Of a stretch of DNA of 64,000 bases, positions 1-45,408 are shown piece by piece. Made by a program: the position numbers and the translations under genes. Under the pieces are notes generated by a model that was given only the letters and a program-made list of their open reading frames with translations, was not told where the DNA came from and did no database searches. Positions within the stretch are counted from its first letter, which is position 1. Each line of letters begins with the position of its first letter. The stretch is from the IMG/VR virus record IMGVR_UViG_3300047499_000113, positions 176,016-240,015 of that record. One strand, given 5' to 3'.

Positions 1-971
1 CTGTCAAAGTTTATGTTCTCATCAAAGTCTGTTGCAGGAAACCCGTACGGACCCGATACGTCCTCGATCTCCTTGCCGGAAAGCCAGTTGCCGAGACTCT
101 GGAGAAAATCGTCCATCGTCTCTTCGTTCTTCATCACCGTGGGAAGCGCAGAATCGGAAACTTTTTCCTTTTGACTTGTGTAGGCGCCGCTGTCCTGGGT
201 GGGCGCCACATAGTCAGTGAAAAGAGCCCGCCTGCTCGACCCGGTATGACCGGGGTGCATATAATCGTAGTAGTCAGTCCGCGCCGCAGGATTATCACCA
301 TCGACAGGAAGCTCCGAGTGCTCTTCGGAAACTTTCTTGCCTTTGGGCCTGATGGCGCCAGGATCACGACCGTCGACGCCCTGCTCCTGCGGAAGCGTCG
401 TAGCTTCCGCTACGGTCTCCACTCGAGCGTCGTAGACGTCGGTCTTCGGATGGAAGTGCTGGATGTTGGCGTCCTGGTCGCCCGGAACGAGGCCCACAGC
501 AATGAAGCCGCGGTGCATGAGGGTCCCGAGACGTCCATCGTCACCGTCCGGATAGATTAGACTCCGGTCTGGATTGAAGACGTTGGCCGGCTGAGCATCT
601 CCAATGGGAGGCTCGTGCTCGCAGTCCTCGTCGCAGACGTGGTCCGGCGGCAGAACGCCATTCGGAAGAGGTCCGAGGCGCATTGTCATCTCGGACACTG
701 GTGATGTGTCGACCGACACTGGATAGCTGACAGTGCGGCTCTCCGGCTCGTTCGGATACGAGAGCCACTCCTCATCACCGGCCCCGTTGCCGGGGACCTC
801 GATCTGCGATGACTTGGTGGCGTCGTCTGGCAGCGTGCGGCCTGCAGGCTCGTGCGCCTCAGAGTTCTCCCCGTGATCCCCTTCTTCGTCTCGCTGGGAA
901 TCGTAGGTCCCGATGCCCCAAGTATCGACTTGCTTGGGGAGGGTGCTCTCTGTGGGGAGTGTAGACGGCAT
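1..971 (-). CDS. Acidic low-complexity hypothetical protein, partial (runs off the window start)
   Basis: Not in the ORF track. ATG at 971-969 overlaps the upstream TGA (TGATG). Hand translation reads MPSTLPTESTLP...TDFDENINFD to base 1 with no stop found. Confidence 0.7.
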   Translation of the reverse strand, partial: MPSTLPTESTLPKQVDTWGIGTYDSQRDEEGDHGENSEAHEPAGRTLPDDATKSSQIEVPGNGAGDEEWLSYPNEPESRTVSYPVSVDTSPVSEMTMRLGPLPNGVLPPDHVCDEDCEHEPPIGDAQPANVFNPDRSLIYPDGDDGRLGTLMHRGFIAVGLVPGDQDANIQHFHPKTDVYDARVETVAEATTLPQEQGVDGRDPGAIRPKGKKVSEEHSELPVDGDNPAARTDYYDYMHPGHTGSSRRALFTDYVAPTQDSGAYTSQKEKVSDSALPTVMKNEETMDDFLQSLGNWLSGKEIEDVSGPYGFPATDFDENINFD

Positions 972-23203: not shown

Positions 23204-26200
23204 TCAGCTACAGCCGGTCGTTTGACCGCACGAAGTGCACAGGTAGCACGACCCATTGCGCTGCGTGATGCTGCCGCACCGAGCGCACGGAGGGCCACCG
23301 AGATTCTTGCGGGGAGGAACAGGCTCTTCCGCCGTAGCGACGGCCTGGATGCGTGTCGACGAATCGGGCTCCTTCGAGATTCCCTCGCGAACGTCCATTG
23401 CCGGCGGAGGAGCTTCAGACGCCTTCATCTGAGCGAGCTTCTCCTCGAGGCCCGAGTGCGAGCCGCCGTAGTAACGGACATCGAGCACCTTGAACAGGTA
23501 GTCGTACAGGCTCTTGGCGAACCTGATGTGCTTGTTCGAGGTGATGCCGGCGGGCTCGAACCTCGTATCGACGAAGCTTTGGATGAGCTTCGGCAGAGGC
23601 ACGCCATACTGAAGAGCGATGCTCATCAGCTGCGTGAATCCGTCGATGAGGCCCGAAATCGTGCTTCCTGGCTTTCCGAGCTTGAGGAATACCTCGCCCG
23701 GTCGCCCGTCCGCGTATTCGCCGACGATGATGTATCCCTTGTAGCCGTCGATCTCGAACTTGTGGCGCCAGCTGTTGACCTCGGCGGGCAGCTTCTCACG
23801 ACGTGCTCCAGCGGCCTTCGCTTCCGCGATGAGCTGGTCGACCGGAGGAGCCTTCGGCGCCGGCGCGGGCCTGATCCCTTCCTTGTCGCCGTCCTTCTTG
23901 GTAGAAAGAGGCTGCGAAGCCTTGCACCCGTCACGGTAGAGCGCGATGCACTTGAGCCCGAGCCGCCAGCTCTCCTCGTAGATCTTGGCGATTTCCTCGG
24001 CCGTGATCTCGCTCGGAAGATTGACGGTCTTGCTCATCGCGCACGTGATGAGCGGTTGTATGGCCGCCATCATCTTGATGTGCGCCATGGGCGAAAGGTA
24101 TCGACCGCCAGGTGCAGAAGGCATTGCGCAGTCGAATACTGGAAGGTGCTCGGGCTTGAGACCCGGAGCGCCTTCGATGGTGCCGTTGTCCTCGAGGGAC
24201 TTGCAGATGGTGTTGATCTGGTCTTCGGCGTAGCCGAGTCCGAGAAGCGCGTCACGTACGCCCGTGTTCACCAGGCGCAGAGAGCCTCCGCCCACCATGC
24301 TCTTGTAGCTCACGAGCGAGAACGCCGGCTCGATGCCGGTGGTGCTCATTCCCATGAGGAACGAGATGGTGCCGAGAGGCGCCTGGAGAGAAGCCTGCGA
24401 TACCGAGTAGCCGTACCTCTCACCAAGAGCGATTGCCTCGCGCCACACCTCGGCCGACGTCGGAACCACGTCGTCCCCGGTCGGAGACGACTCGAGATGC
24501 CAGCGCTTGATGATGGTCGCATCAGCTTCTTGATGCATCTTCATCACGCGGAGCATGTCCTCGCGGTTCAGCTCGAAATCCGGGAACGAGCCGACACGCG
24601 CCGCGAGCTTCGCCGCGGTGACGTAGACCATGCCCGTCATGAGCGATGCCATCTGCGCAGCTACCGCACGACCTTCGTCGGTGTCGTAACCGTAGCCGAG
24701 CTTCATCAACAGCGCTCCGAGGTCGCCGTAGTTCGTCCCGATGGGGCGCAGCTTGTGCGAGTTGTGCGCGATCTCTTCGGTCGGGTAATCCGCCTTGTCG
24801 ATGATCGCCATCTGCGAGGTCGAGAACAGGCGAACAGCCTGCTCGAAACGCGCCTTGACGAACTTGCGACCGTCGAAGAACTTCGTCAGGTTGATCGCGC
24901 ACAGGTTGCACGCCGTGTTGTCGACATGCAGGAACTCGCTGCAGTTGTGAGCCACCACCCCGTCAGCAATCAGAGAGCTCGTCTCCGGCTCCGTGATGTC
25001 ATAAACGAGGGTTTGCTCGCCTTTGTCGACGACCCTTACGACTTCATCGGTCCATTGATCACGGCCGTTGTTGTTCACGCCTTCCGGGATTTCGTCCAAA
25101 CGCGCCTGCTTGCGTGAGGAGAGGAGACCCACTTCGAGCATAAGAGATTTGAAGGTACGCAGACTCTGTCCAGTGATGACGAGATCGTTCGTTTTTTCCT
25201 TGGACGGGTAAGTCCGGACTTCCCCAGATTTGGTCGTATACGTGAACGACGGCTTATCGCCAGGACGCCGATCCTTATAAAGAGTGCTGTTGACGCCGAG
25301 GTTCAGAAGAAGAGCCTGCACTCCGCGCAGAAGTTCCAGGCTGGTGGAGCTGAAGCGAGCGTCGACGTTCTTCTTCGGCTGGATGTTGAAAGTCCCATCC
25401 GCAGAGAACAGGCCAGAGAGGAACGAGAGCTGCTCCAGTCGAGTGGAGCAAAAAACCGCGTCCATCACTTTCTTGACTGGAGCCTTCGTTCCCGGCTCGC
25501 AAGAAAGCGTGGACATTAGTTGCCAGACAGCCTTTCGGTGAATACGGACATAGTCCGGACTTTCACCCACAGAGCCGTCCTGACGCTTCAACGAGTATGG
25601 GATGTCGTTCCGTTCGAAGAACTTCGAGACGGTATCGAGGACGTCCTTGTCGTCACGACCGAACAGAAGGCCAACCTCGTGAGTGTTTCTGCAGGGGAGA
25701 GGTCGCAGAACCCAGCCGTCGCCGACGACCCAGCCGGCGAGCTTATGCCACATCAGGCGATCGTCGACAGCAGAGAAAGCTTTTTGAGCCTCCGTCGGGA
25801 GGCATGGCTCAGCACCCTTCTCAGAGAAGGCTCCCTGTCCGGCCTGAAGCATCAGGATGCTTTCATCCGTCAGATCGCGCGCTTCAACCCAGCCGTCCTT
25901 GGTCATGAGGCGATGATCATGGGTGACTTTGATGACACGGCCTCGACGCGTGTGAACCTCGACGAGGTGATGGACACCGGTCGGGAAGACGACCGCGTCC
26001 TTGAGCTGAGGACCGTCCGGAGTTTGGACGAGAGTGCGGAATGTCGGTTTATTCGAGTCAAAAGACTCGAACTCGGAGCAGAGATCCTCAATTCGCACGA
26101 GTCCATGCTCAGTGGCGATCCTAGTGTCCGGATGGAAGCACGGATTGCTCGCACGGATCGGACCACTCTTGGGAGTGGTGTGCCACCTGTTGATGGCGTC

Positions 26201-27289
26201 CGTGAACTGCACGCCAGGGTCTCCACAGACCCACGCGGCTTGAGCGATCTCGTTCCACAGCTCACGTGCCTTGTACTTGTGAACTGTCTTGCCCGAGCGG
26301 CGTTCCTTCGTTTCCCACTGCCCGTCGTCGAGCATGGCCTGCATGAAGGAGTCCGGCACCGACACTGAGTTGTTGGCCGCCTGGAATCGAATCCGCTTGT
26401 AGGCCCCATTCGGATCGTCGTACGCAGCCGAGTAGCCCGCCGCCACGAGCGCGTGAGCAAGCTTCTCCTCTTCCGCCTTGCAGCGGATGAAGCCCGGACG
26501 TCCATCGCGAGTCTGTAGCACGTCGGGATGGTCCATGTCCATCACGACCATCTTGGCCGCGTTGCGTGTGGCGCCGCCTGACTTCATCGCCTTGGCGTAG
26601 GCGTCGAGTCCTTCCATCCACGAGATTGGACCGGACGTGTACGAGCCAGACGAGATCTTCTCGTAAGAGGAACGGAGCTTCGAGATGTTGGCGCCGGAAC
26701 CAGATCCTGAACGGAAAATCTTCATCTCCGCGGTCTGATACTTCATGATGTCTTCGATGGAGTCGTTGACATCTTGGATGAAGCACGCCGAGGCCATCTG
26801 AGCGCGGCCGGCGATACCGAGATTGAACCACACAGGCGAGTTGAACGCGCCGTACTGGTGGAGAAGAGCGTAGCAAAGCTCCTCCTCGAACACCTGCGCG
26901 TCCCTGTCCGTGTTGAAGTATTTCTGCTCCTCGGCCCAGCGGCGGAGAGTCGAGCATACGCGCTGGAAGACTTGCTTGACGGAAGTCTCACGCACGCCGT
27001 TGATCACGCGGAAGTATTTATCCGCAACGACGTTGATGTTGTTCTGAGTCCACCACGCGGGCACCTCGATGTCCTTCTGAAAGAACACCACGTCGCCCTT
27101 GGCGTTGCGGATCTCAGCATCGGCACGACGCCACTCCACCTCGTCGAAAGGATGGACGCCGTCCTTCGTGAAAACACGGGGCCAGTGACCAGCTTCTTTG
27201 GCGATGCGCGCTTGCTCCGACGACAGATCAGCACGGGTCCCTTTCAGGATCGGTACCACTTGTGCTGACATTACGCTAGCGCTTGACAT
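23204..27289 (-). CDS. nrdJ: Class II (B12-dependent) ribonucleotide reductase with intein
   Basis: FNSPVW, SACF, NPC|SE, ACNLCAINL, APLGTIS, SKTVN, YRDG, C-terminal TSCPD-like region and Zn ribbon. Confidence 0.93.
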   Translation of the reverse strand: MSSASVMSAQVVPILKGTRADLSSEQARIAKEAGHWPRVFTKDGVHPFDEVEWRRADAEIRNAKGDVVFFQKDIEVPAWWTQNNINVVADKYFRVINGVRETSVKQVFQRVCSTLRRWAEEQKYFNTDRDAQVFEEELCYALLHQYGAFNSPVWFNLGIAGRAQMASACFIQDVNDSIEDIMKYQTAEMKIFRSGSGSGANISKLRSSYEKISSGSYTSGPISWMEGLDAYAKAMKSGGATRNAAKMVVMDMDHPDVLQTRDGRPGFIRCKAEEEKLAHALVAAGYSAAYDDPNGAYKRIRFQAANNSVSVPDSFMQAMLDDGQWETKERRSGKTVHKYKARELWNEIAQAAWVCGDPGVQFTDAINRWHTTPKSGPIRASNPCFHPDTRIATEHGLVRIEDLCSEFESFDSNKPTFRTLVQTPDGPQLKDAVVFPTGVHHLVEVHTRRGRVIKVTHDHRLMTKDGWVEARDLTDESILMLQAGQGAFSEKGAEPCLPTEAQKAFSAVDDRLMWHKLAGWVVGDGWVLRPLPCRNTHEVGLLFGRDDKDVLDTVSKFFERNDIPYSLKRQDGSVGESPDYVRIHRKAVWQLMSTLSCEPGTKAPVKKVMDAVFCSTRLEQLSFLSGLFSADGTFNIQPKKNVDARFSSTSLELLRGVQALLLNLGVNSTLYKDRRPGDKPSFTYTTKSGEVRTYPSKEKTNDLVITGQSLRTFKSLMLEVGLLSSRKQARLDEIPEGVNNNGRDQWTDEVVRVVDKGEQTLVYDITEPETSSLIADGVVAHNCSEFLHVDNTACNLCAINLTKFFDGRKFVKARFEQAVRLFSTSQMAIIDKADYPTEEIAHNSHKLRPIGTNYGDLGALLMKLGYGYDTDEGRAVAAQMASLMTGMVYVTAAKLAARVGSFPDFELNREDMLRVMKMHQEADATIIKRWHLESSPTGDDVVPTSAEVWREAIALGERYGYSVSQASLQAPLGTISFLMGMSTTGIEPAFSLVSYKSMVGGGSLRLVNTGVRDALLGLGYAEDQINTICKSLEDNGTIEGAPGLKPEHLPVFDCAMPSAPGGRYLSPMAHIKMMAAIQPLITCAMSKTVNLPSEITAEEIAKIYEESWRLGLKCIALYRDGCKASQPLSTKKDGDKEGIRPAPAPKAPPVDQLIAEAKAAGARREKLPAEVNSWRHKFEIDGYKGYIIVGEYADGRPGEVFLKLGKPGSTISGLIDGFTQLMSIALQYGVPLPKLIQSFVDTRFEPAGITSNKHIRFAKSLYDYLFKVLDVRYYGGSHSGLEEKLAQMKASEAPPPAMDVREGISKEPDSSTRIQAVATAEEPVPPRKNLGGPPCARCGSITQRNGSCYLCTSCGQTTGCS
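24944..26140 (-). mobile_element. 399-aa intein with LAGLIDADG homing endonuclease
   Basis: Starts CFHPDT after SNP; ends VYDI...VAHN before C-S-E; blocks LAGWVVGDG and FLSGLFSADG. Confidence 0.92.
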
Positions 27290-28190
27290 CCTTCGCCTCC
27301 TCAGACAACCGAATCACTTCCAACTCCAGACCAAAGCGCGCCCAAGGACTACCGCGTTTGTGCGCGATGTCCAGGTCGCAAAGCGTGTCGATGGACCGTT
27401 GTAGCGACTGCTTGGTCCATAGACCCTTGCGAGTTACGTACATCCGCTTGAGAACAAACGGATGGACCCCGAGAGTTATGGCGGCCCGGTCGTCGGGTGC
27501 CTTGCTCTCCGCCAGCAGCTCGAACCGCAGCTGCTGAAGTACATGACGCTGCATGTACGCGAGGACCCACCCAGTCTCATCGGTGCGCTCCTGGAGCTTG
27601 TCGAGAAAAGCGAGCGCTCTGGCGGTTTGTCCGTCGCATAACGAGTCAACAACTTCTTTCGGGGTCAGCTCGGCAGAGAAACAGAGGAGGGAGCGTGCTG
27701 CGTCCGGTGATACGACGCTACCTTTTGGCGTGACCAATGCAAGCTTGTCCACCTCTGTAGCGAGCTTACGAAGACTGCTTCCAGAGTTCACAAAAAGAGC
27801 ACCCGCTACTCTCGATAGATCTATGTTGTGCCTTTGACCCTCTTTTAGGATCCAGCCGAGCACTTCGTTGTTTTCCGGATATGACTTCAATTTTGGAAAT
27901 TTCAACGCGCGCTTGGCCTTCGGGTGCGTGAGTGGCTTCTTGCTGAGGACAATCAGCGTGTCATGCTCGTTGACGGGGAGCGCAGGCACCTCCTTAGCAT
28001 CCCAAATGACGTACGCGCGCTTTCCTCCGCCAAGGAGGCAGCACGACGACTCCTGCAGATATTCATCGAGCCCCGCTGAAGTGGCATCGAATTGCAGCAC
28101 TTCTTCAGCGAGACTGAGACGAGCCTCGTCCTGAGCGGCCCGCTCCATCAACAGCTCTTCCTCGCCACTGATGAGGACCAAGACCGGCAT
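27276..28190 (-). CDS. holA: DNA pol III delta subunit-like
   Basis: 'LISGEEELL', 'EVDKLAL', 'LGVHPF', 'LCDLDIAHKRG'; start uncertain. Confidence 0.75.
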   Translation of the reverse strand: MPVLVLISGEEELLMERAAQDEARLSLAEEVLQFDATSAGLDEYLQESSCCLLGGGKRAYVIWDAKEVPALPVNEHDTLIVLSKKPLTHPKAKRALKFPKLKSYPENNEVLGWILKEGQRHNIDLSRVAGALFVNSGSSLRKLATEVDKLALVTPKGSVVSPDAARSLLCFSAELTPKEVVDSLCDGQTARALAFLDKLQERTDETGWVLAYMQRHVLQQLRFELLAESKAPDDRAAITLGVHPFVLKRMYVTRKGLWTKQSLQRSIDTLCDLDIAHKRGSPWARFGLELEVIRLSEEAKDVKR

Positions 28191-28201
28191 GGACTGGTAG
28201 C

Positions 28202-29023
28202 TTACACCAGAGACACCAGATGGGTAGCCATTCTCAGCCAATGGATCTCGGCGCTCGCGGACGGCACGGAGAGTAGAGCGGAGCTGTATCTGAGAATCGT
28301 CACCAACTGATCGGTCGTGGCTTTCTTGAACTTCGCTGCGGTGAGCGCTGCTTCGCGACAAACGTGCGCTACGCACTCTCGTTGCAGGGGTTCTTTGGCC
28401 TCTTTGACGACCTCCGGTACGGAGTCAGTCAGTAGACTGGCCTTGCCCTCGCACGCACGCATGAGGATGTCGAACAACTCGGCGTGCTTGGTGCCGCCCT
28501 CGTTTTCGAACATAGCATGGAAGAGTCCGGGCCGTCCGCCACACAAGATGAGCGCTTTGCTGTCTTCGCCGGATCCGAAGGCGACGGCGAAGTTGCGCAT
28601 CTCCATGAGAGACAAGAGCTTCCATCGAATGGTGCAACGGAATCTCGAGCGGATCGCGGGCTGCAGGAGCCCATCGTCCGGCACCACAAACACGATGCAC
28701 GAATGATCGCCCGGCTGCTCGAGAAGCTTGAGATACGCGTCCTGCGCAGCCTCCGTCATCGTATGCGCATCATCAACGATGACGTACCTATTCGGTGACG
28801 AGAGCGGGTGCGTCTTGCAGAATTCGACCGCCTCGCGAGCCGAATCGATACTTTTGTCTGCCAGGAAGAGATCCGTCTCTGCCGTCAGCTCAGATAGGGT
28901 GTCCCTCAGGAACGTCGCTTTGCCCACGTGCGACGGACCCGTCAGGCACAGACTCCTGGCCGAGCTGTCCAGAGCCACCTTCAGCTTCGACTGCGCTGGG
29001 GAGTTGCCGAAGATTTGCGTCAA
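28202..29023 (-). CDS. holB: DNA pol III delta-prime subunit-like
   Basis: GPSHVGK, 'DDAHTMTEAAQDAYLKLLEQP', 'LQPAIRSR'. Confidence 0.8.
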   Translation of the reverse strand: MTQIFGNSPAQSKLKVALDSSARSLCLTGPSHVGKATFLRDTLSELTAETDLFLADKSIDSAREAVEFCKTHPLSSPNRYVIVDDAHTMTEAAQDAYLKLLEQPGDHSCIVFVVPDDGLLQPAIRSRFRCTIRWKLLSLMEMRNFAVAFGSGEDSKALILCGGRPGLFHAMFENEGGTKHAELFDILMRACEGKASLLTDSVPEVVKEAKEPLQRECVAHVCREAALTAAKFKKATTDQLVTILRYSSALLSVPSASAEIHWLRMATHLVSLV

Positions 29024-29791: not shown

Positions 29792-30955
29792 CTACGACCA
29801 GTCGGGCTTCACCGACTTGGATGCAACCCGAGCTGCGATGCTGAGAGCGCGAGCCAACGGCAGCTCCGACGCCACCTGCTCTTCACCCTCCGCCTTGCCC
29901 TTGCCCGGGTTCTCCTCGGCCTTGATGGCGTCCACGTCGACGCCTTCCTTCTTCAGCTTCTTGGCGAGAGAGTCGTACGACTTCTTCTCGGATGGAGTGA
30001 GCGTGCCCTGCTCCTCCTTCCACTTGAAACGCGCGACCTTGCGCTCGTCGATGCCGCGCTGGTAGTCCAGCTTGTCCTGGACCTTCTTCTTCTCCATGCG
30101 GCGCACGGCGCTCGGATCGACGTCGCCGAAGAATGTTTCCTTCAGCTGATCGTAGGCCGCGGGCTCCATGTACTCATCGAGATACTTCCAGATCTCGTCG
30201 AGGAGCTTCTTGCGCAGGTCGCCCACGAAGCCCGACCAGCGCTTCTCGTGCTTCTTGTACAGCTCCGGGTGCTTGTCCTTGAGCGCCGAAGCCTGGCCCA
30301 TGTTCTCCTTGATGTCGGAGCCGAATGAGCCGATGTTGTCCTCGAAGATGAGGTCGAACAAAGCACGTGTCTCGGGCGAGAGAGTCGCCTTCAGGTCGTT
30401 GACATGCTCGTCGATGAGGTCGATGAATTCCTTGACGGCTGCCTTGTCATCCAGGGCCTTGCCAAGAGCGGACTCGGGGTCCGTAGGCATGCGGCCCTCG
30501 CCACCCTCCGGCGAGCCACCGCCCTCGGGGCGCTGACCGTAGGCTTCGTCCACGCCCTTCTCGCGCTTCTTCTGGCGCGTCTTGCCCATCGACTCCGAAA
30601 TCGCGCGCCGGCGCACGTTCGTGTAGATGGCGTCCAGGGCGTCCTGCCACTTGGGGAAGTCCTTCTTGAAATCCCAGTTCTTGCTGACCAAGTAGGTCAG
30701 AAAGTCCTGGATGACGTCCTGGGCGCGCGTCTCGTCCTGCTGAACTTGCTTCTTCGCAATGTTCATCAGCTTGGCGCCGACCGCCTGCGGGTCCAGGTCG
30801 ATCTTCTCGCCAGGATAGGACTTCTTCAGGACCTCGAGCAGGCCCTTGCCGATGCCGGTGTTGACGTCAGCGTAGAGGCGGAACATGGCCAGAAGCAGTC
30901 GGATGGAGGGTGCAATTCCATGCATGGGCGCGCTCGTGACCATCACCAAAAGCAC
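29792..30955 (-). CDS. Divergent sigma-factor-like protein
   Basis: 'RAQDVIQDFL...IYTNVRRRAI' (region 2-like) and 'LSPETRALFDL' (region 4 start-like); C-terminal IAARVA. Confidence 0.45.
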   Translation of the reverse strand: MLLVMVTSAPMHGIAPSIRLLLAMFRLYADVNTGIGKGLLEVLKKSYPGEKIDLDPQAVGAKLMNIAKKQVQQDETRAQDVIQDFLTYLVSKNWDFKKDFPKWQDALDAIYTNVRRRAISESMGKTRQKKREKGVDEAYGQRPEGGGSPEGGEGRMPTDPESALGKALDDKAAVKEFIDLIDEHVNDLKATLSPETRALFDLIFEDNIGSFGSDIKENMGQASALKDKHPELYKKHEKRWSGFVGDLRKKLLDEIWKYLDEYMEPAAYDQLKETFFGDVDPSAVRRMEKKKVQDKLDYQRGIDERKVARFKWKEEQGTLTPSEKKSYDSLAKKLKKEGVDVDAIKAEENPGKGKAEGEEQVASELPLARALSIAARVASKSVKPDWS

Positions 30956-30966
30956 CCACCAAAGCT

Positions 30967-32499
30967 CTAACCCGCATGGGCGACACGATTGTCGTTCGCG
31001 AGAGAGCGGTTGATAGCCGCCGTGACACGCTCTTCCGATACGTGGAACCGGGCCGAAATTCCGGGGATGCCCATGCCCATATCGAAGAGGGAGGAGAACA
31101 GTTCGGTCCTGGCCAGCACGACCGGCCCGAACAGGGCCGTGCCGGCGATGTCAGCCACGGTGCAACCGTGTTTGGAGGCGATGCGCTCGGCCATCTCGTC
31201 CGTGACGACGTCCGGCATGTCCTGCGCCTGAAGCTTGCGGTGCGCGCTCGCAATGAGGCGGTGGACCTTGGCCACCGGCAAGTCGGATTTCTCCGAGTAT
31301 TGCCGAACGCTCATGTCGCCGAGATCCACCGACACGAGGACGTCTGCCTCCTCGTCCGACAGATTGGCCGAGTCGACCAGGCGCTTGACGTCATGCCAGC
31401 CCTCGGCCTGCACGAACTTGCTGATGGCGCCGTTGTCGCGGATGACACGCTGGATGGTGGACGGGTCGTCGCTTTCCTTGTCGTCGGAGTCCCAGGCGAC
31501 CGTCTCCTTGTCGCTGAATTCGGGCGACATGCCCTTGTTGAGGACCATCGTCGAGAGGTCCTCTGCACGACCCATGCGCTTGAAGTCGTTGACGACTTCG
31601 TGGTCGATCACCATCTCGGCGTACTTGAGCAGGCCCGCATCGATCCCGTGCTTCGGATCGCGCCGCATGATGTAGAGCGGGGAGCTTTTCACGAGGTTCT
31701 GCCGGCGCCAGTCGCGCAGGAACGGCCGCAGTTGCGAGTCGTTCCAGCGGAGCTTGCGAACCGCGTCGACCACGTCCGCGCTGCTCCAGCGATGCGAGAG
31801 CGACAGCCCGCGCGAACGTAGCAGCTCGCGCCCGTGGTCGCAAACCGGGCACGCCTGCACACGAGAAAGGTGGTAGTGGTTGCTGCAGTAGCCCATCGCG
31901 TAGTGCTTGCGGTTGCAGTCGCCGTAGCCGCACAGGTCGCCACGCTTAGGGATGGACTCGATCTTCTCCTGGCACTCGTGCTCGGTCAGCTCCGAGGGCT
32001 TGAGCTTGCCCTGCCGGTAGAGCGACTCGAGCGCGCCGAAGTCGTTCGGCCCGTAGCCCAGCAGGCGCAGCACCTTCGTCGAGTCGATGGTGTGGCTCTG
32101 GATGGAGTAGAAGTAGCGCTCGTAGTCGAACTTCGCGTAGTCGAGAAGATCCGACACACGGAAGATGGACGTGTCGAGCGCGGGGTCGCTGCGACGCTTG
32201 CCGTAGACGGGGACGACCGCGCCCGTGTACGTGAGCATCACGCCGCCGAGGATGAGTTCGGCCTGCTTCTTGTCGACCAGCTCGTCGGTCAGGTGCTTGA
32301 AGAACCAGCGACCGATGAAGTTCTTGGACAGGAGGCGCAACCGCACGTTCTGCGCGGTGTCCTGGCAGCGCTCCTTATCGCGCTTGAAGTGCCGCGCCAC
32401 CTTGCCCGCAGTCCAGTGATACCACTGCTTGAGGAAAGACTGGTTGGTGGGAATGGCGATGGGGTGAAGCGCAGGCACAGACAGAGACGACCGGCTCAT
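30967..32499 (-). CDS. Sigma-like protein with inserted Zn finger and C-terminal DnaA-domain-IV-like HTH
   Basis: Region 2-like 'ERCQDTAQNVRLRLL'; CGYGDC...GYCSNHY; region 4 'LSDEEADVL...VHRLIASAHRKL'; 'IASKHGCTVADIAG...VVLAR...GISARF'. Confidence 0.6.
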   Translation of the reverse strand: MSRSSLSVPALHPIAIPTNQSFLKQWYHWTAGKVARHFKRDKERCQDTAQNVRLRLLSKNFIGRWFFKHLTDELVDKKQAELILGGVMLTYTGAVVPVYGKRRSDPALDTSIFRVSDLLDYAKFDYERYFYSIQSHTIDSTKVLRLLGYGPNDFGALESLYRQGKLKPSELTEHECQEKIESIPKRGDLCGYGDCNRKHYAMGYCSNHYHLSRVQACPVCDHGRELLRSRGLSLSHRWSSADVVDAVRKLRWNDSQLRPFLRDWRRQNLVKSSPLYIMRRDPKHGIDAGLLKYAEMVIDHEVVNDFKRMGRAEDLSTMVLNKGMSPEFSDKETVAWDSDDKESDDPSTIQRVIRDNGAISKFVQAEGWHDVKRLVDSANLSDEEADVLVSVDLGDMSVRQYSEKSDLPVAKVHRLIASAHRKLQAQDMPDVVTDEMAERIASKHGCTVADIAGTALFGPVVLARTELFSSLFDMGMGIPGISARFHVSEERVTAAINRSLANDNRVAHAG

Positions 32500-32669
32500 C
32501 TTTTCGCATCTCCGTGCGGCGGTTGTACCGCCGGCTGAGTGGAGGGTTGCTGCTACTCGAGAATGCCCGCCCTATGCGGACTGGGCGGAGAGTACAGAGC
32601 CTAGCATGGTGACTAGGCTGCCACAATCATTCGCGAACAAACTGGAAACCGCTTCGATAACTTACACTC

Positions 32670-32813
32670 TGTGGGTGAACTGTGGACGGATCTGTGGAAG
32701 ACTTGTGGATGTTGTAATTGTACGCCTCAAAAAGGCTCGAAAAACCCGGCTCCGAATGCGTCCACAGGCTGTGGACGCGAAGACCTGTGGACGAACACGT
32801 CAAATTATGAATA
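32670..32813. promoter_or_regulatory. Cluster of seven DnaA-box-like TGTGG(A) motifs; candidate replication origin
   Basis: Motifs at 32670, 32681, 32693, 32704, 32758 (reverse), 32770 and 32786 in a non-coding gap, followed by a short AT-rich stretch. Confidence 0.65.
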
Positions 32814-32878
32814 CGTTTCGGGGCCATCCGAACGGATGACCCCGATTCGCCGGTCCAGAATACCGCAGAAATACCCGA

Positions 32879-34152: not shown

Positions 34153-34569
34153 CGTCTACGTCCGTATCTTCTGTACTTCCACCGTCTCCGTCACCGCTAG
34201 CTTCGCTACCGCCACACGCTCCTTCGGAGCTTCATCTTCCGTCGTCGTTGTTTGAGCAAGAAACTTGATCGAAGGATCAAGAAGAGAAGATCCTTTGGGG
34301 AAAGGATCTTTTTCACAAGGTTGCGGAATGGAACCGGTTGCTCGTGAAACGAGGACGTCCGTGAGCATTGGACGAACCGACTGCTTCTTGATGCAATCTT
34401 CCTGGGTCTGTGCCACCGCCCGAAGGCTAGGGACTTCTCCTCGTTGAACTGTGCTCCGAGGATCGGTCCCCACTGAGCATGTATTGTCATACATGGTCAC
34501 GGTCTTGCTCCCTGCAGCGAGGACTCTACAGCGCAGTGACGCGAGCGCGACCGAAGTATAATTGTCGAG

Positions 34570-35341: not shown

Positions 35342-36517
35342 ATGCAAGACGGCAAGTTCAACGTCATCATTGACGCTTTTTGGGGTTCATCTGGCAAGGG
35401 CAAGACCTCGACGTGGTTGGCCGACAAGTTTTCGGTCACCCGTGTGTCGTCTTCGAACTTCCCGAACGCCGGCCACACAGCCGCTTTCGAGGACGGGACG
35501 AAGTTCGTGGCTAAGGCCATCCCCACTGCCGCCATTCTCAAGAAGACTCGAGGCATGGGCGTCGAGTGCTTTCTTTCACCGGGTTCCGGTTTCGCGTGGG
35601 CGCAGCTCGTCAAGGAGTGGAAGGAAGCCGGCAAGCCGACCATCCGCATCCACGAACGAGCCAGCATCGTCACCGACGACCACGCAAAGCGAGAGCGTGA
35701 AGGCGCGGAGTCGACGATGCACATAGCGTCGACGATGCAGGGTTCGGCTGCGGCAATCGTGGACAAGGTGCTTCGCAAGGCGGACTGCCAGCTCGCGTGG
35801 AACACCGTCGACGAAGTGATGCGCGGATTCGAGGGCACGATGAGCCCCGAGTTCGCCGAGTCGGTTCGCGTACTCAAGGCCGACGCTTTCCGCGCAATGT
35901 CGCAGGGCGCGGTCCTCGACGAGGGCCACACGTGGCTGCACGAGGGCTCTCAGGGCTTCTCGCTCTCCATCGACCATGGCTCTCACTACCCGCACTGCAC
36001 GAGTCGAAACTGCACGGTGCAAGCGGCGCTCGATCACATGGCGATGCCGCCGCAGGTCCTCGGCGACGTCTATCTCAATCTGCGCACTCGACCCATACGC
36101 GTAGGGAACGTCGTGGACAATGGCATCCAGAAGGGTTACTCGGGCGATTTCTACCCGGACTGCAAGGAGATGACCTGGGAGCAGGTCGCGGCAGAGTCCG
36201 GGATGCCGGCGGAGGAAGCGAAGATCCTGGCCGAGCGCGAGCGCACAACGGTGACCAAGCGCATCCGCCGCGTCTGCAACTTCACCTTCGTGGGCCTGCG
36301 CGACGCCGTGCGCACCAACGGCGCCACGAAACTCTGCCTCAACTTCATCCAGTACGTCAACTGGGAAGACCGTGGCCTCAAGGGAGGCCGGGACGCCTTC
36401 GACAAGCTCTCGAAGAAGAGCCGCGCGTTCATCGATAGGGTCGAGGAGGCCGCGCAAGTGCCGGTCGTGCTCGTGGGAACCGGCGCGCTTCATGATGAAA
36501 TGATAACTCTCTTGTAG
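35342..36517 (+). CDS. purZ: PurZ-type N6-succino-2-amino-deoxyadenylate synthase (PurA paralogue)
   Basis: WGSSGKGK (Ser where PurA has the Asp of GDEGKG), PNAGHT, EGSQG.SL, YPHCTSR, PIRVG, TTVTKRIRR, LNFIQY in place of the TKLD-type motif. Confidence 0.82.
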   Translation: MQDGKFNVIIDAFWGSSGKGKTSTWLADKFSVTRVSSSNFPNAGHTAAFEDGTKFVAKAIPTAAILKKTRGMGVECFLSPGSGFAWAQLVKEWKEAGKPTIRIHERASIVTDDHAKREREGAESTMHIASTMQGSAAAIVDKVLRKADCQLAWNTVDEVMRGFEGTMSPEFAESVRVLKADAFRAMSQGAVLDEGHTWLHEGSQGFSLSIDHGSHYPHCTSRNCTVQAALDHMAMPPQVLGDVYLNLRTRPIRVGNVVDNGIQKGYSGDFYPDCKEMTWEQVAAESGMPAEEAKILAERERTTVTKRIRRVCNFTFVGLRDAVRTNGATKLCLNFIQYVNWEDRGLKGGRDAFDKLSKKSRAFIDRVEEAAQVPVVLVGTGALHDEMITLL

Positions 36518-36538
36518 CAGCGGTAATTACCGTTGCTA
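36515..36538 (+). promoter_or_regulatory. Hairpin covering the whole purZ-HNH spacer
   Basis: TAGCAGCGGT-AATT-ACCGTTGCTA; 10-bp stem with one G-U pair, including the A of the ATG. Confidence 0.6.
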
Positions 36539-36990
36539 TGATTCAAAAGAAGCGCCGCTGCAACGTCTGTAAGAAGAAGAAGACTCTCGATGAGTTCTAC
36601 AGGAACTCAAAATTCCCACTGGGCCGTACATATACGTGCAAGCTTTGTATGAATGAAGCGGGCACGGCGAGGTACCAGCGGAACAAGGAAGAAATCAATC
36701 GGAAGAGGCGAGAGGAAACCAGACGCCTGAAACTTGAAGTGGTCGATGGGTATGGCGGGCACTGCGAGTGCTGCGGTGAAGACCGGTGGCAGTTTCTCAA
36801 CATCGACCATCGCAATGGGGGCGGGACAGCTGAACGACGAAATGCCAAGAACAAGAATCCACTTTTCTTTTACAAACGGCTCGTCGCCGAGGGTTTCCCT
36901 AAAGAAAAGTTCCGTTTGCTCTGTTGGAATTGCAATTTGAGCATTGGTCTATACGGGTCGTGTCCACACACAGAAGAGAAAGTCGCATGA
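36538..36990 (+). CDS. Free-standing HNH-type endonuclease
   Basis: CNVC, CKLC, CECCG, NIDHRNG, LCWNCN; same family as 18777-19373. Confidence 0.8.
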   Translation: MIQKKRRCNVCKKKKTLDEFYRNSKFPLGRTYTCKLCMNEAGTARYQRNKEEINRKRREETRRLKLEVVDGYGGHCECCGEDRWQFLNIDHRNGGGTAERRNAKNKNPLFFYKRLVAEGFPKEKFRLLCWNCNLSIGLYGSCPHTEEKVA

Positions 36991-37572
36991 CCGACGAAGA
37001 TCTCTTCTACGATCCTGAGTCGGTCTATAACTTCAAGGTGAAGAAAGTGGCGCGCGTTCCGTCGGGTGAGAAGATGCATGACCTCGTCGTCCGAGACGGC
37101 TACGCGCTCTTTTGGGGCGAGTGGCCGTCCAACTGGACGTGGGCGCCCTTCACTCTCGACGGCGTGCGGTATAACTGCACCGAACAGCACATGATGGCAG
37201 AGAAAGCTCGGCTCTTCAAGGATGAGCAGGCTCTCCGCCACATCATGAAGGCTACGGACCCGGCGAACCAGAAACGCTATGGTCGGCAGGTAAAGGGCTT
37301 TGACGAACGTAGATGGTCGTCAGTCTGCTACGACATCGTGCTTCGTGGGAATCTCGAGAAGTATCGGCAAAACCCGGAGCTTTGCGAGAAGCTCCTGGCG
37401 ACCGGGAATCTCCATTTTGTCGAGGCTAGCCCCAAGGATAAAGTGTGGGGCATCGGTATGGACAAACATCACCCCGACGCGACAAAACCCCGGCAAATGG
37501 CTCGGCAAAAATCTGCTCGGGAAAGTGCTCGACGAAACCAGGCGTATCATCAGGCAGGAGCGTGGGTTGTGA
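36987..37572 (+). CDS. NADAR family N-glycosidase, interrupted by a 1-bp frameshift near 37484-37491
   Basis: SNW, TEQHMMAEKARLF, GRQV, EASPKDKVWGIG in one frame; the conserved WLGKNLLGK end is in the next frame. Confidence 0.8.
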
Positions 37573-38057
37573 GCCAGCTCGTGGACTTCTACGCCGGCGC
37601 CGGCAAAGACCACGCGGGCCGCAAGATCGACGACATTTGGGCTTGGGATGAAGACAAGCTCGAGAACGTTCACGACTACATCCAGTGGCTCTTCCCGAAC
37701 AGGGCCCCGAGCCGCTTCAATCCGGAGGCTCCGCTACTGACCGACGAAGACGCACAAGCTTTCAAGGAAAGCACTTACCTGTCGTCGCGAGTTCTGCGCT
37801 CGTTCGACATGATGTGCGCGTTCTATCGCGTTGGCTCCATGCAGTGCAAGCGTGCAGGCGTGAACGAGGGCCCGCCGTACTGGTGGGACAGCTTCGCGCA
37901 TTCGCACAATTGGCTGCGGATGACCCGCATCATGCTCTGCATGACCGAGGTCGGCTACCAAGACAACGCAAAAACTTTTCTCGAGTGCATCGAGAAAGCG
38001 ACTCTTCCGGACAGCAAAACGCGGCTCTTTTGGCGAGCCGCAGCGGGCGTGAAATGA
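37569..38057 (+). CDS. OGFr N-terminal-like domain protein
   Basis: LENVHDYIQWLFP, HNWLRMTRI; GTGA overlap with the NADAR stop. Confidence 0.8.
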   Translation: MSQLVDFYAGAGKDHAGRKIDDIWAWDEDKLENVHDYIQWLFPNRAPSRFNPEAPLLTDEDAQAFKESTYLSSRVLRSFDMMCAFYRVGSMQCKRAGVNEGPPYWWDSFAHSHNWLRMTRIMLCMTEVGYQDNAKTFLECIEKATLPDSKTRLFWRAAAGVK

Positions 38058-39036: not shown

Positions 39037-40371
39037 ATGAGCGACATCAAGACAGAAGTCTTTTGCCTCACAGCCCCGGACGGCCGTCTGTTGCCACCTG
39101 CTGTACAGGCAACGGTACTCGCCAAGTATTCCCGATCGCCACTGTCGGCGCGGCAAATCGTCGCGTCGCTGACGGAGGAAGAGGCGGACAAGTTCCAGGA
39201 GAAGTGGGTCATCGGGTACAACCACTCGAGCGTCGCTGAGTTGGCTGTTTTGCCGATTTGCTTCGAGGGCGTGTCCATCGTCGCTTCCAAATTCCTGGAA
39301 TCCTTCCAAAGGCCCGGGTACTCGGAAAAGAGTACACGTTACCAGGTCTTCTCTCGCGATTCCTTCGTCACGCCACCTGGTGCGCCGGCGACAATGCAGA
39401 AGTTTGCCGCCAGGTTCTACGACGCGTACGAAAGCCTGTATCCGAAGGTCCTGCAGCGTGTGGCCAAGCTCACCGGCAAGGACCCGGAAGACCGATTGGT
39501 CAAGGCTCGAACATTCGACAACGTCAGGTATCTGCTGCCCGCCGGGACCGGCACGAACCTAGCCTGGGTCGGCAATGCGAGAGACGCTCGCTACCTCATT
39601 TCCGCAGCTCGAGGTCACACCAACCCCGAGATCCGGATGCTCGGCGATATGGCAGCGAAAGCCGTGGCAGAGATGTGCCCGGTGTTCGTGCAGAAGGCCG
39701 ATGCGGACTCATTCGAACCGCCGATTCGGAGCCTCGGCAATCTCAGCCCGAAGTTCGACTTCTCCAACCCGAACTGGTACGTCGACTTGCATCGCAAGCA
39801 TCTATTGCCAGACTCGGCGCTCGTGCAGAAGTCCTTCGAGGCAGCGATAGCTGACCGCCACGGCATGAGTTGGTCTGCTTTCTCGAAGCTCATGGAGTCC
39901 CGTGGACCCCGAGCGGTACCCAGGGTGTTCCGCACAATCCAGCTCTCGTTCGACATCATGATGGACTACGGAGCGTATCGCGACCTGCAGCGGCACCGCA
40001 GGTGTGAGCAATACGCCGAGCCCCTGCACCCCAACTACGGATTCCTCGTCCCGGACGACATTCTCGGGACCGAACTCGAGCAGGAGTACCGGGCGGCAAT
40101 GCAAGCGGCCCACGCGTACGACGACGAAGCGGTCGTGCACGACCCCGACCTGATGCAGTACATGGTTCCACTCGGATACCTGCACCGGTCGGTCTTCGAC
40201 ATGGACGCTCAGGAGGTTTATTACCTGTCCGAGTTGAGGACGCAGCCTCAAGGCCACATCTCGTACCGGCGAGTGGCGTACGAACTGAGTCGTGTGGCGG
40301 CGGCCAGGCTCCCTCAGGTCTTCCAGTGGTGCCGGGCCATCAAGCCGGAGGCAATCGGCGAACACAAGTGA
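39037..40371 (+). CDS. thyX: Flavin-dependent thymidylate synthase, long two-domain type
   Basis: GYNHSSVAE, SEKSTRY, RYLLP, RDLQRHR, ELRT..QGH.SYR. Confidence 0.85.
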   Translation: MSDIKTEVFCLTAPDGRLLPPAVQATVLAKYSRSPLSARQIVASLTEEEADKFQEKWVIGYNHSSVAELAVLPICFEGVSIVASKFLESFQRPGYSEKSTRYQVFSRDSFVTPPGAPATMQKFAARFYDAYESLYPKVLQRVAKLTGKDPEDRLVKARTFDNVRYLLPAGTGTNLAWVGNARDARYLISAARGHTNPEIRMLGDMAAKAVAEMCPVFVQKADADSFEPPIRSLGNLSPKFDFSNPNWYVDLHRKHLLPDSALVQKSFEAAIADRHGMSWSAFSKLMESRGPRAVPRVFRTIQLSFDIMMDYGAYRDLQRHRRCEQYAEPLHPNYGFLVPDDILGTELEQEYRAAMQAAHAYDDEAVVHDPDLMQYMVPLGYLHRSVFDMDAQEVYYLSELRTQPQGHISYRRVAYELSRVAAARLPQVFQWCRAIKPEAIGEHK

Positions 40372-45381: not shown

Positions 45382-45408
45382 GCTGCTTGTGAAGGGTAGC
45401 GTTTGACC

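What the first reader, a model, noticed from the sequence alone, without database searches (positions are those of the whole stretch)
30967..32499. Unusual sigma-like / Zn-finger / DnaA-domain-IV-like fusion beside the box array
Seen: an apparent sigma region 2 is split ('ERCQDTAQNVRLRLL' early, 'LLKYAEMVIDHEVVNDFKR' over 200 aa later) by an insert containing CGYGDC..GYCSNHY and CPVC. A region-4 HTH follows, then a final domain patterned like the DnaA C-terminal HTH. Its upstream region is the TGTGGA array. Inference: a factor coupling transcription initiation to origin recognition, or an autoregulated initiator.
Basis: inference. Interest (0 to 1): 0.65.

Follow-up and report, generated by a model that had tools for sequence, protein, structure and literature searches.

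The report
Split sigma factor with DnaA-like tail
A huge moss-associated phage encodes a real but very unusual RNA-polymerase sigma-type protein: its promoter-melting domain is interrupted by a 215-residue zinc-binding insert, and a DNA-binding domain shaped like the bacterial replication initiator DnaA is fused to its end; what the extra parts do is still unknown.

Summary
AlphaFold models (pLDDT 90 and 94) and fold searches give this layout:
- Sigma domain 2 is split, residues ~14-70 plus 287-317. An unbiased search put sigma-2 domains in all of the top ~25 places (best Z 8.7).
- A ~215-aa insert with no detectable relatives sits where ECF sigmas have the -10 "specificity loop".
- The insert holds an invariant H174/C176/C217/C220 site. 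The CGYGDC..GYCSNHY finger is an optional nested module, present in 59 of 119 relatives.
- Sigma region 4 covers residues 355-427 (Z 9.7).
- Residues 431-507 superpose on DnaA domain IV (Z 11.2) but lack DnaA's basic loop, its DHTTV motif and any AAA+ domain.

The family is small (47 representatives among 1.84 billion proteins). It is confined to huge-phage contigs and always lies between a PurZ-like gene and the clamp-loader and ribonucleotide-reductase genes.

The TGTGGA/TCCACA array is real (6 copies in 111 bp, the only cluster in 240 kb). It sits at a fixed 41-42 bp upstream of a conserved host-type extended -10 promoter and occurs in only 3 of 8 related loci.

Best reading: an early-expressed phage sigma factor with extra DNA-reading modules. 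The array is probably a clade-specific promoter operator. Origin coupling is unsupported but not excluded.

The parts
30967..32499 (-). CDS of the 510-aa sigma-like protein (P0001)
   Evidence: At least 194 homologues at 40-86% identity, all from metagenomic or huge-phage contigs.
32290..32460 (-). N-terminal half of sigma domain 2 (residues ~14-70; helices 19-25, 27-37, 42-58, 61-69). It contains D47 (118/119) and the invariant Q50, R55 and R64-W65-F66.
   Evidence: VIA-align wide search: model 14..319 matches whole sigma-2 domains with 70-89 residues aligned. Atlas neighbours are Sigma70_r2 clusters. Residue counts.
31642..32289 (-). Insert of ~215 aa (residues 71-286; 176-286 aa across the family) at the position of the ECF sigma -10 specificity loop. 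No known fold or family was found for it.
   Evidence: The position is inferred from 5zx2_F chain 22..105 aligning to model 14..318, with the sigma-H specificity loop at residues 72-79 (PMC6411747).
31840..31980 (-). Core putative Zn site H174-x-C176 ... C217-x-x-C220
   Evidence: H174 is kept in 118/119 relatives; C176, C217 and C220 in 119/119.
31864..31941 (-). Optional nested Cys/His mini-module (CGYGDC..GYCSNHY, residues ~187-212)
   Evidence: Present in 59 of 119 relatives, absent in 60, duplicated in P0034 and P0039. Weak match to the N-terminal part of phrog_5351 (HNH endonuclease), E 0.0019.
31549..31641 (-). C-terminal half of sigma domain 2: a long helix 287-317 with Y293, N/H300, N304, F306 and K307, in a pattern like regions 2.3-2.4 of ECF sigmas
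   Evidence: The pattern was compared with sigma-H residues W81, I85, N88, N92 and Y94 described in PMC6411747; this step is inference.
31438..31548 (-). Acidic linker of lower model confidence (residues 318-354) between sigma-2 and sigma-4
   Evidence: pLDDT is 56-74 in this stretch.
31219..31437 (-). Sigma region 4 HTH domain (residues 355-427)
   Evidence: pdb_via: 8x6g_H Z 9.7, rmsd 2.0, 68 aligned, plus dozens of other sigma-4 chains. Pfam Sigma70_r4 in 23/34 relatives. PDB profile hits are sigma factors only.
30979..31209 (-). DnaA-domain-IV-like helical HTH domain (residues 431-507). It is absent in 15 of 119 relatives.
   Evidence: 1j1v_A Z 11.2; 3pvp_B Z 10.9; 8btg_B Z 10.8. phrog_27829 'DnaA-like' matches this copy at E 0.0084 and 28/103 relatives; Pfam Bac_DnaA_C matches 14/103, best E 6e-5. 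hhalign against E. coli domain IV is in register but weak: probability 18%.
32598..32626 (-). Conserved sigma-70-type promoter of the gene: -35 TTGTGG (32621-32626), 17-nt spacer, extended -10 TG-c-TAGGCT (32598-32606)
   Evidence: The TT of the -35 and the TGnT of the extended -10 are invariant in 8 homologous loci. The simple consensus scan did not flag it.
32510..32533 (-). 5'-UTR hairpin (stem CGGCGG/CCGCCG, 32517-32533) directly 5' of the Shine-Dalgarno GGAG (32510-32513)
   Evidence: Consensus fold of 8 loci: 6 pairs, 5 with compensatory double changes.
32669..32709 (-). Proximal box array: CCCACA plus 3 x TCCACA direct repeats at 11-12 bp spacing, about -81 to -116 from the predicted transcription start
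   Evidence: The last two boxes are invariant and lie 41-42 bp from the -35 in the window, L009 and L002.
32761..32791 (.). Distal box group: three TCCACA boxes, two of which form the palindrome TCCACAGcCTGTGGA
   Evidence: inverted repeat I7.
32818..32845 (-). GC-rich hairpin after the upstream 326-aa gene; it probably separates the two transcription units
   Evidence: Inverted repeat I2. It is kept with compensatory changes in L009.

Best explanation
The gene encodes a highly derived, phage-specific member of the sigma-70 family with the two-domain (sigma-2 + sigma-4) layout of ECF-type sigmas.

Proposed mechanism:
- Host RNA polymerase holoenzyme transcribes the gene early, from a conserved host-type extended -10 promoter. 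This is inferred from sequence.
- The protein then binds host RNAP core. Its sigma-2 helices contact the beta-prime clamp helices and its sigma-4 contacts the beta flap. This is inferred from fold, conserved residues and a weak co-fold signal.
- The new holoenzyme is directed to phage promoters. This is inferred.

Two additions make it unlike any described sigma:
- A ~215-aa insert carrying an invariant His/Cys3 site replaces the short -10 specificity loop. It would therefore lie against the -10 element and non-template strand.
- A DnaA-domain-IV-like HTH is fused directly after the sigma-4 recognition helix. It would therefore lie on DNA just upstream of the -35 element and act as a third DNA-reading head. 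This is also inferred.

The TCCACA array is most likely a clade-specific operator that controls the gene's own promoter. What binds it is unknown; candidates are this protein's C-terminal domain, another phage HTH protein, or host DnaA.
For: Fold evidence:
- The models are confident: pLDDT 90.0 for the whole protein and 93.7 for residues 1-322.
- An all-against-48,161-chain search of residues 1-322 returned sigma-2 domains in essentially all of the top 25 rows. Examples are 5uxx_C Z 8.7, sigma-H Z 8.2, AlgU Z 8.0, and also T4 gp55 Z 6.9. The matches span model residues 14-319 with only 70-89 residues aligned.
- The ESM-Atlas shape search also gave Sigma70_r2 clusters.
- Sigma-4: Z up to 9.7, Pfam r4 in 23/34 relatives, and only sigma factors in the PDB profile search.

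Residue evidence:
- D47 (118/119), Q50, Y293 (118/119), N304, F306 and K307 are invariant or nearly so.
- They fit the beta-prime-contact and -10-reading positions described for sigma-H (PMC6411747).

Co-fold with E. coli beta-prime residues 220-334:
- The verdict was weak support: score 0.59 against a best control of 0.02.
- That mark was reached by 51 of 78 solved complexes and 2 of 108 mismatched pairs.
- At 0.60 or under it was reached by only 5 of the 78 solved complexes and by all 4 mismatches that passed.
- The runs agree in at least 64% of contacts, and the partner's pLDDT is at least 63.

Context:
- No RNAP beta-like gene is found in the contig.
- A conserved TTG-17-TGnTAnnnT promoter lies upstream in 8 loci.
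- Synteny with replication and nucleotide-metabolism genes is conserved.
- Some relatives are already labelled 'sigma24 family' by JGI.

The array as an operator:
- The distance from the last box to the -35 is fixed at 41-42 bp.
- The boxes are spaced at 11-12 bp, about one helical turn.
Against: - No sequence model recognises sigma region 2. Pfam Sigma70_r2 gives no hit. hhalign against E. coli RpoE finds nothing. The exhaustive profile search with the N-terminal part finds no ordinary sigma factor.
- Z scores of 7-9 for small helical domains are in the range where the tool warns that a match may be only a common arrangement.
- The co-fold verdict is only 'weak support'. It may reflect memory of solved sigma/beta-prime complexes, and E. 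coli is not the host.
- No phage promoter motif for this factor was found; a crude k-mer search was uninformative.
- The contig is only ~56% complete, so a phage RNAP cannot be excluded.
- No RNA data exist.
- Nothing shows what the insert or the C-terminal domain binds.
Confidence: 0.6

Rival explanations
1. The protein couples transcription to replication initiation, or is itself an initiator. Its DnaA-IV-like domain would bind the TCCACA boxes as an origin, and its sigma part would bring RNAP to open or prime the origin, as in the transcription-activated origins of lambda, T4 and T7.
For: - The C-terminal domain has the DnaA domain IV fold (Z 11.2), with weak family-level sequence signals.
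- TCCACA is the core of the DnaA box, and the repeats are direct at 11-12 bp spacing.
- The gene sits in a conserved replication module with delta, delta-prime, ribonucleotide reductase, helicase and clamp genes.
- It lies ~1.5 kb from a point of divergent transcription.
Against: - The array is absent from 5 of 8 related loci, although the putative recognition helix (E-x-R-V-x-A-A-I-N-R) is the same in all of them.
- The domain is missing in 15 of 119 relatives.
- DnaA's basic loop and DHTTV motif are not kept.
- There is no AAA+ module.
- No box in the array is a full TT[AG]TCCACA 9-mer.
- The boxes keep a fixed distance to a promoter.
- There is no GC-skew switch, though the contig is incomplete.
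Confidence: 0.12
2. A sigma-derived DNA-binding regulator that no longer works as a sigma. It would act as a repressor or activator through its HTH domains, or as a decoy that binds another partner through its sigma-like surface, as PhyR does.
For: - The specificity loop that all studied sigmas need for -10 reading is replaced by a large domain.
- Pfam does not recognise region 2.
- PhyR's sigma-like domain is among the structural matches (3t0y_C, Z 5.9).
- The protein has three potential DNA-binding modules.
- A box array lies upstream of its own gene, which is typical of autoregulated repressors.
Against: - Residues at the positions that contact beta-prime and the -10 element in sigma-H are strictly conserved.
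- The linker has the length typical of ECF sigmas.
- The co-fold signal with beta-prime, though weak, is far above the controls.
Confidence: 0.15
3. The array has nothing to do with this protein. It would be a set of low-affinity host DnaA sites, used to titrate host DnaA or to put the early promoter under host DnaA control.
For: - The TCCACA core matches positions 4-9 of the DnaA box.
- One box reads TCGTCCACA, a relaxed match.
- DnaA is a known transcription factor acting at promoters (PMC8203912, abstract listed).
- The contig encodes no DnaA of its own.
Against: - Position 2 of the 9-mer is C, not T, in all six boxes of the window.
- The host is unknown.
- The array is absent in most relatives.
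Confidence: 0.13

Closest known systems
ECF (group IV) sigma factors, e.g. M. tuberculosis sigma-H (5zx2/6jcx) and E. coli sigma-E (2mao, 1or7)
   Same: Only sigma-2 and sigma-4, joined by a ~40-residue linker. Both folds match. The D-x-x-Q and W/Y..I..N...N.F/Y residue patterns are shared.
   Different: A ~215-aa Zn-site-bearing domain stands in place of the 8-residue specificity loop. An extra C-terminal HTH domain is present. The region-2 sequence is too diverged for Pfam or hhalign to detect. The family is found only in huge phages.
ECF sigmas with fused C-terminal domains (e.g. M. tuberculosis sigma-J with SnoaL_2, PMC5766207; metal-dependent CorE2/ECF44, PMC4937300)
   Same: A sigma-2/sigma-4 core carries an added domain or Cys-rich element that modulates promoter recognition or activity. 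This rests on titles and abstracts listed.
   Different: Here the added C-terminal domain has a DnaA-IV-like DNA-binding fold, and the Cys/His site lies inside sigma-2 rather than at the C-terminus.
DnaA domain IV (E. coli 1j1v, M. tuberculosis 3pvp, B. subtilis 8btg)
   Same: The same five-helix HTH fold over 77-80 residues: Z 10.8-11.2, rmsd 2.1-2.8 A. The helix-by-helix register of the sequence alignment agrees.
   Different: Non-basic residues replace the basic loop, and S-E-E-R-V stands where DnaA has D-H-T-T-V. Domains I-III, including the AAA+ module, are absent. This copy does not reach the Pfam Bac_DnaA_C model.
Phage-encoded sigma factors and sigma-like subunits (T4 gp55, 7d7d_F; AR9 gp226, 7s01_A; jumbo-phage 'group 2' sigmas, PMC7824862)
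   Same: Phage proteins that redirect a multisubunit RNAP. Their sigma-2-like folds match the model (Z 6.9 and 6.2). Jumbo phages without their own RNAP typically encode sigmas.
   Different: No sequence similarity was found: tblastn against 50,697 phage records gave nothing. None of these proteins is described with this insert or this C-terminal domain.

Membership tests
Sigma-70 family (ECF-like two-domain sigma) | Sigma region 4 HTH domain | tested here: met
   Structure: Z 9.7 and many sigma-4 chains for residues 355-427. Pfam Sigma70_r4 in 23/34 relatives, best E 3.6e-9; this copy scores 17.7 bits, below the 24.1 cut-off.
Sigma-70 family (ECF-like two-domain sigma) | Sigma domain 2 fold | tested here: met
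   The top ~25 of 48,161 chains are sigma-2 domains, Z 6.2-8.7. The Atlas neighbours are Sigma70_r2 clusters. The domain is discontinuous: residues 14-70 plus 287-317.
Sigma-70 family (ECF-like two-domain sigma) | Recognition by the sequence model of region 2 (Pfam PF04542) | tested here: not met
   No Sigma70_r2 hit for this protein or for any of 34 relatives. The own-genome scan hits a different ORF only. hhalign against RpoE finds nothing in region 2.
Sigma-70 family (ECF-like two-domain sigma) | Short -10 specificity loop between the third and fourth sigma-2 helices | tested here: not met
   A 176-286-aa domain replaces the loop in all 119 relatives.
Sigma-70 family (ECF-like two-domain sigma) | Binding to RNAP core (beta-prime clamp helices) | tested here: inconclusive
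   Co-fold with E. coli beta-prime 220-334: score 0.59 against a best control of 0.02, verdict 'weak support'. The host polymerase is unknown.
Sigma-70 family (ECF-like two-domain sigma) | Promoter-specific initiation by the holoenzyme | not testable with these tools
   This needs in vitro transcription. No cognate promoter motif was found.
DnaA C-terminal DNA-binding domain (domain IV, Pfam Bac_DnaA_C) | Domain IV fold | tested here: met
   1j1v_A Z 11.2, rmsd 2.1, 77 of 94 residues aligned; 3pvp_B Z 10.9; 8btg_B Z 10.8; 2hcb_C Z 10.1.
DnaA C-terminal DNA-binding domain (domain IV, Pfam Bac_DnaA_C) | Match to the family's sequence model | tested here: inconclusive
   This copy has no PF08299 hit. 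Of 103 relatives, 14 hit it weakly, best E 6e-5. phrog_27829 'DnaA-like' matches this copy at E 0.0084 and 28/103 relatives. hhalign probability is 18%.
DnaA C-terminal DNA-binding domain (domain IV, Pfam Bac_DnaA_C) | DNA-contact elements: the basic loop and the D-H-T-T-V recognition motif | tested here: not met
   In the in-register alignment, non-basic residues replace the basic loop and S-E-E-R-V replaces the motif. That these elements contact DNA is from established knowledge of 1J1V, not tested here.
DnaA-type replication initiator | AAA+ ATPase domain (Pfam Bac_DnaA) | tested here: not met
   No PF00308 match in the protein or anywhere in the 240 kb contig.
Replication origin with initiator boxes | Cluster of repeated initiator boxes | tested here: met
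   Six TCCACA boxes plus one variant within ~125 bp, the only such cluster in 240 kb.
Replication origin with initiator boxes | Conservation with the putative initiator, a strand-skew switch, and an unwinding element | tested here: not met
   The array is present in 3 of 8 loci only. There is no skew switch, though the contig is incomplete. The inter-box stretch is only modestly AT-richer (read). The boxes are tied to a promoter at a fixed distance.
Zinc-binding module | Conserved set of four Cys/His ligands | tested here: met
   H174 in 118/119 relatives; C176, C217 and C220 in 119/119. Metal binding itself cannot be tested here.

The most novel reading that the evidence does not exclude
The family is a sigma factor rebuilt for an unusual template or task.

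Reading (a): it reads promoters in 2-aminoadenine (Z) DNA. The gene is always a few kilobases from a PurZ-like gene. Ordinary sigmas are reported to be sensitive to A-to-Z substitution in the -10 element (PMC8342488). The part of sigma-2 that reads the flipped -10 base is exactly the part that has been replaced by the Zn-site domain.

Reading (b): the DnaA-IV-like head brings RNA polymerase to box arrays to fire or prime the phage origin.

Either would be a new mechanism of promoter or origin recognition.
Probability: 0.15. Interest if true: 0.85.

Novelty: new variant of a known kind. Interest (0 to 1): 0.62.

Why it matters
Sigma factors are among the best-studied DNA-reading proteins, and the -10 specificity loop is central to how they melt promoters. 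This is a conserved natural family in which a 215-residue putative zinc-binding domain replaces that loop and a replication-initiator-type HTH follows sigma-4. It would show a new way to build promoter specificity. It also gives a direct handle on how huge phages take over host transcription, possibly on chemically modified DNA. In addition, it links the DnaA domain IV fold to the transcription machinery.

Tried and rejected
- Similarity to known phages: tblastn of the protein and blastn of 8 kb against 50,697 phage records gave no match.
- Foldseek of residues 1-322 against the PDB and BFVD gave nothing clear. The language-model Atlas search of the insert gave only sub-threshold 'hypothetical' clusters. 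The insert therefore stays unassigned.
- Weak TniQ-like rows (7u5d_I Z 5.3; 6pig_J) were not pursued.
- hhalign of the family profile against single E. coli RpoE and DnaA domain IV sequences gave 2.6% and 18% probability. Sequence-level homology is not shown; single-sequence templates are weak.
- Cumulative GC skew of the 240 kb contig shows no turning point at the locus. This is uninformative because the contig is ~56% complete.
- K-mer enrichment in crude upstream regions gave no promoter motif for the factor. TCCACA is not enriched genome-wide: 106 observed against ~121 in simulations. It is therefore not a general promoter element.
- The divergent intergenic region 34153-34569 and its counterparts hold no conserved repeat array.
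- The consensus promoter scan missed the conserved extended -10 promoter, because TAGGCT has only 3 of 6 matches to TATAAT. The promoter call rests on conservation instead.
- Z-genome status is unproven: no MazG or HD (DatZ-like) domain is found in the contig.
- Co-fold with beta-prime gave weak support only. It counts as a hint, not as evidence of binding.
Full report
**Observation.** The window is the last 64 kb of a 240,015-bp IMG/VR viral contig, estimated 56% complete. Identical sequence is held in moss metagenomes. ORF 30967..32499 on the minus strand encodes 510 aa. Single-sequence family scans were weak. Pfam Sigma70_r4 matched at E 0.0026, below its cut-off. An HNH-type PHROG matched the Cys motif at E 0.0019. 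A 'DnaA-like' PHROG matched the C-terminus at E 0.21.

**Genomic setting.** The element is a huge phage with a bacterial-type replisome. The minus-strand side carries:
- clamp-loader subunits (8333-9754, 27276-28376, 28202-29023);
- a sliding clamp (13125-14258);
- a RecD2-like helicase (16466-18736);
- a class II ribonucleotide reductase with an intein (23204-27289).

The plus-strand side carries a PurZ-like adenylosuccinate-synthetase homologue (35342-36517) and ThyX (39037-40371). No RNAP beta-like gene, DnaA AAA+ domain or Bac_DnaA_C match is present in the contig.

**The family.**
- A word-index search found at least 194 homologues at 40-86% identity. All come from metagenomes, many on contigs of 100-436 kb, and a few carry the JGI label 'sigma24 family'.
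- An exhaustive profile search with the N-terminal 322 residues found only 47 representatives among 1.84 billion proteins. All are family members or fragments. No ordinary sigma factor appeared, and the insert was not seen in any other architecture.
- Synteny is conserved in every locus with enough flank. The order is ThyX ... PurZ-like, then (diverging) a small gene, a 266-326-aa gene, this gene, a ~370-540-aa gene, one to three small genes (65-127 aa), delta-prime, delta, and ribonucleotide reductase.

**Structure.** AlphaFold2 with a 119-sequence alignment gave pLDDT 90.0 for the whole protein and 93.7 for residues 1-322.
- Residues 431-507 superpose on DnaA domain IV. E. coli 1j1v_A gives Z 11.2, rmsd 2.1 A, 77 aligned; M. 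tuberculosis 3pvp_B gives Z 10.9; B. subtilis 8btg_B gives Z 10.8.
- Residues 355-427 superpose on sigma region 4. 8x6g_H gives Z 9.7, and dozens of other sigma chains match.
- For residues 1-322 Foldseek found nothing. The Foldseek-independent comparison with 48,161 chains put sigma-2 domains in essentially all of the top 25 rows: EcfG-type RpoE 5uxx_C Z 8.7, sigma-H Z 8.2, AlgU Z 8.0, SigK, SigB, sigma-E region 2, SigC, SigW, sigma-28, SigR, sigma-70, T4 gp55 Z 6.9 and AR9 gp226 Z 6.2.
- Each of these matches spans model residues ~14-319 but aligns only 70-89 residues. The ESM-Atlas shape search independently returned Sigma70_r2 clusters over the same range.
- Sigma-2 is therefore discontinuous: helices 19-69 plus the long helix 287-317.
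- The Z values are moderate for small helical domains. I accept the assignment because the hit list is uniform, because a sigma-4 domain follows, and because of the conserved residues described next.

**Where the insert sits.**
- In sigma-H, sigma-2 is residues 22-99 and has four helices. The -10 'specificity loop' is residues 72-79. The last helix carries W81, I85, N88, N92 and Y94, which read and melt the -10 element (PMC6411747).
- The alignment of 5zx2_F residues 22-105 to model residues 14-318 places the 215-aa insert at that loop.
- The flanking residues fit the sigma-H pattern: D47 (118/119) and Q50 (119/119) in the second helix, then Y293 (118/119), I/V297, N/H300, N304, F306 and K307 (all 119/119). 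This residue correspondence is my inference from pattern and ranges, not a residue-level superposition.

**The insert itself.**
- It has an invariant H174-x-C176 ... C217-x-x-C220 set.
It is present in 59 of 119 relatives, absent in 60 (where only 4-13 residues separate C176 from C217), and doubled in two.
- No fold or family could be assigned to the rest.

**The C-terminal domain.**
- Family-level sequence signals exist but are weak. phrog_27829 'DnaA-like' matches 28 of 103 relatives over almost its whole length. Pfam Bac_DnaA_C matches 14 of 103, best E 6e-5.
- hhalign against E. coli domain IV is in register helix by helix, but the probability is only 18%.
- In that alignment DnaA's basic loop is replaced by non-basic residues, and D-H-T-T-V by S-E-E-R-V.
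- The domain is absent in 15 of 119 relatives.
- It shares the fold of DnaA domain IV and possibly its ancestry, but it is not a DnaA and need not read DnaA boxes.

**RNAP binding.** A co-fold of residues 1-322 with E. coli beta-prime 220-334 gave a verdict of weak support: score 0.59 against a best control of 0.02.
- That mark was reached by 51 of 78 solved complexes and 2 of 108 mismatched pairs.
- At 0.60 or under, it was reached by only 5 of the 78 solved complexes and by all 4 mismatches that passed.
- The runs agree in at least 64% of contacts, and the partner's pLDDT is at least 63.
- Because sigma/beta-prime complexes are solved, this shows likeness rather than proof of binding.

**Upstream region.**
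- The TGTGGA/TCCACA cluster is real. There are six exact copies in 32681-32791 and one CCCACA variant at 32669-32675. No other cluster exists in 240 kb, and simulated genomes never exceeded three copies per 120 bp.
- None of the boxes is a full TT[AG]TCCACA 9-mer.
- Eight homologous loci share a TTG-17-TGnTAnnnT promoter (window 32598-32626). They also share a hairpin directly 5' of the Shine-Dalgarno sequence, with compensatory changes in 5 of 6 pairs.
- The box array is found only in the three closest phages: the window, L009 and L002.
- In those three, the last two boxes are invariant. They lie 41-42 bp from the -35, with boxes spaced 11-12 bp.
- The other five loci lack the array, yet their proteins keep the same C-terminal helix.
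- This pattern fits a clade-specific operator of an early, host-transcribed promoter better than an origin. It gives no covariation linking the boxes to the C-terminal domain.

**Interpretation.**
- I commit to a phage sigma factor that hijacks host RNAP core (confidence 0.6). Its two extra modules are placed, by the geometry of sigma on promoters, at the -10 element and just upstream of the -35.
- Shown: the ORF, the family, the folds, the conserved residues, the array, and the conserved promoter-like and hairpin elements.
- Inferred: core binding, promoter redirection, early expression, and the DNA-reading role of the extra modules.
- The most novel reading not excluded is a sigma rebuilt to read 2-aminoadenine DNA. 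This rests on the constant PurZ-like neighbour and on the reported sensitivity of sigmas to A-to-Z substitution (PMC8342488). However, the contig shows no MazG or HD partner genes.

**Novelty.** Literature searches found general statements that jumbo phages without their own RNAP encode sigma factors (PMC7824862). They found nothing describing this architecture. I rate it a new variant of a known kind.

Noticed in passing
window 32510-32533 (minus strand): A conserved hairpin directly 5' of the Shine-Dalgarno sequence of the sigma-like gene. Five of its 6 pairs show compensatory changes across 8 loci. A CTCC stretch just upstream could pair with the GGAG, so this may be a translational control element.
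   Followed up: partly
window 32598-32626 (minus strand): A conserved host-type promoter, TTGnnn-17-TGnTAnnnT, is shared by all 8 homologous loci. It suggests early transcription by the host holoenzyme.
   Followed up: partly
window 5778-6551 (minus strand) and 6605-6656: A second transcription-type protein of 257 aa has two Sigma70_r4 domains (Pfam E 4.9e-15). Two ATACGCA(G/T)AC boxes lie directly upstream of it. The same box occurs three times in a row at contig 92689-92737.
   Followed up: partly
window 35342-36517 (plus strand): A PurZ-like adenylosuccinate-synthetase homologue (phrog_1211, E 6.8e-55) with a GSSGKGK P-loop. It is conserved next to the sigma-like gene in related phages. No MazG or HD (DatZ-like) gene was found in the 240 kb contig, so a 2-aminoadenine genome is possible but unproven.
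   Followed up: partly
window 23204-27289 (minus strand): The class II ribonucleotide reductase gene is interrupted by an intein with a LAGLIDADG domain. It encodes 1361 aa, against ~930 aa in relatives.
   Followed up: no
window 29792-30955 (minus strand): A Lys/Glu-rich 387-aa protein with no family match is always encoded directly downstream of the sigma-like gene (~370-540 aa in relatives). It may be a partner.
   Followed up: no
window 36924-38057 (plus strand): A fusion of a NADAR domain (E 4e-38) with an OGFr_N domain (E 2e-22). It lies next to an HNH/endonuclease VII-like gene at 36538-36990.
   Followed up: no
window 45403-47988 (plus strand): An 861-aa protein with five Big_3_5 Ig-like repeats (E 1.3e-62).
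   Followed up: no
L010 2729-3000: In this relative the upstream region carries a perfect ~64-bp tandem duplication instead of TCCACA boxes.
   Followed up: no
contig G000:C1:16476-16577 (outside the window): A weak Sigma70_r2 match (E 0.001, below the cut-off) in a 200-aa frame. This may be a further sigma-like gene.
   Followed up: no
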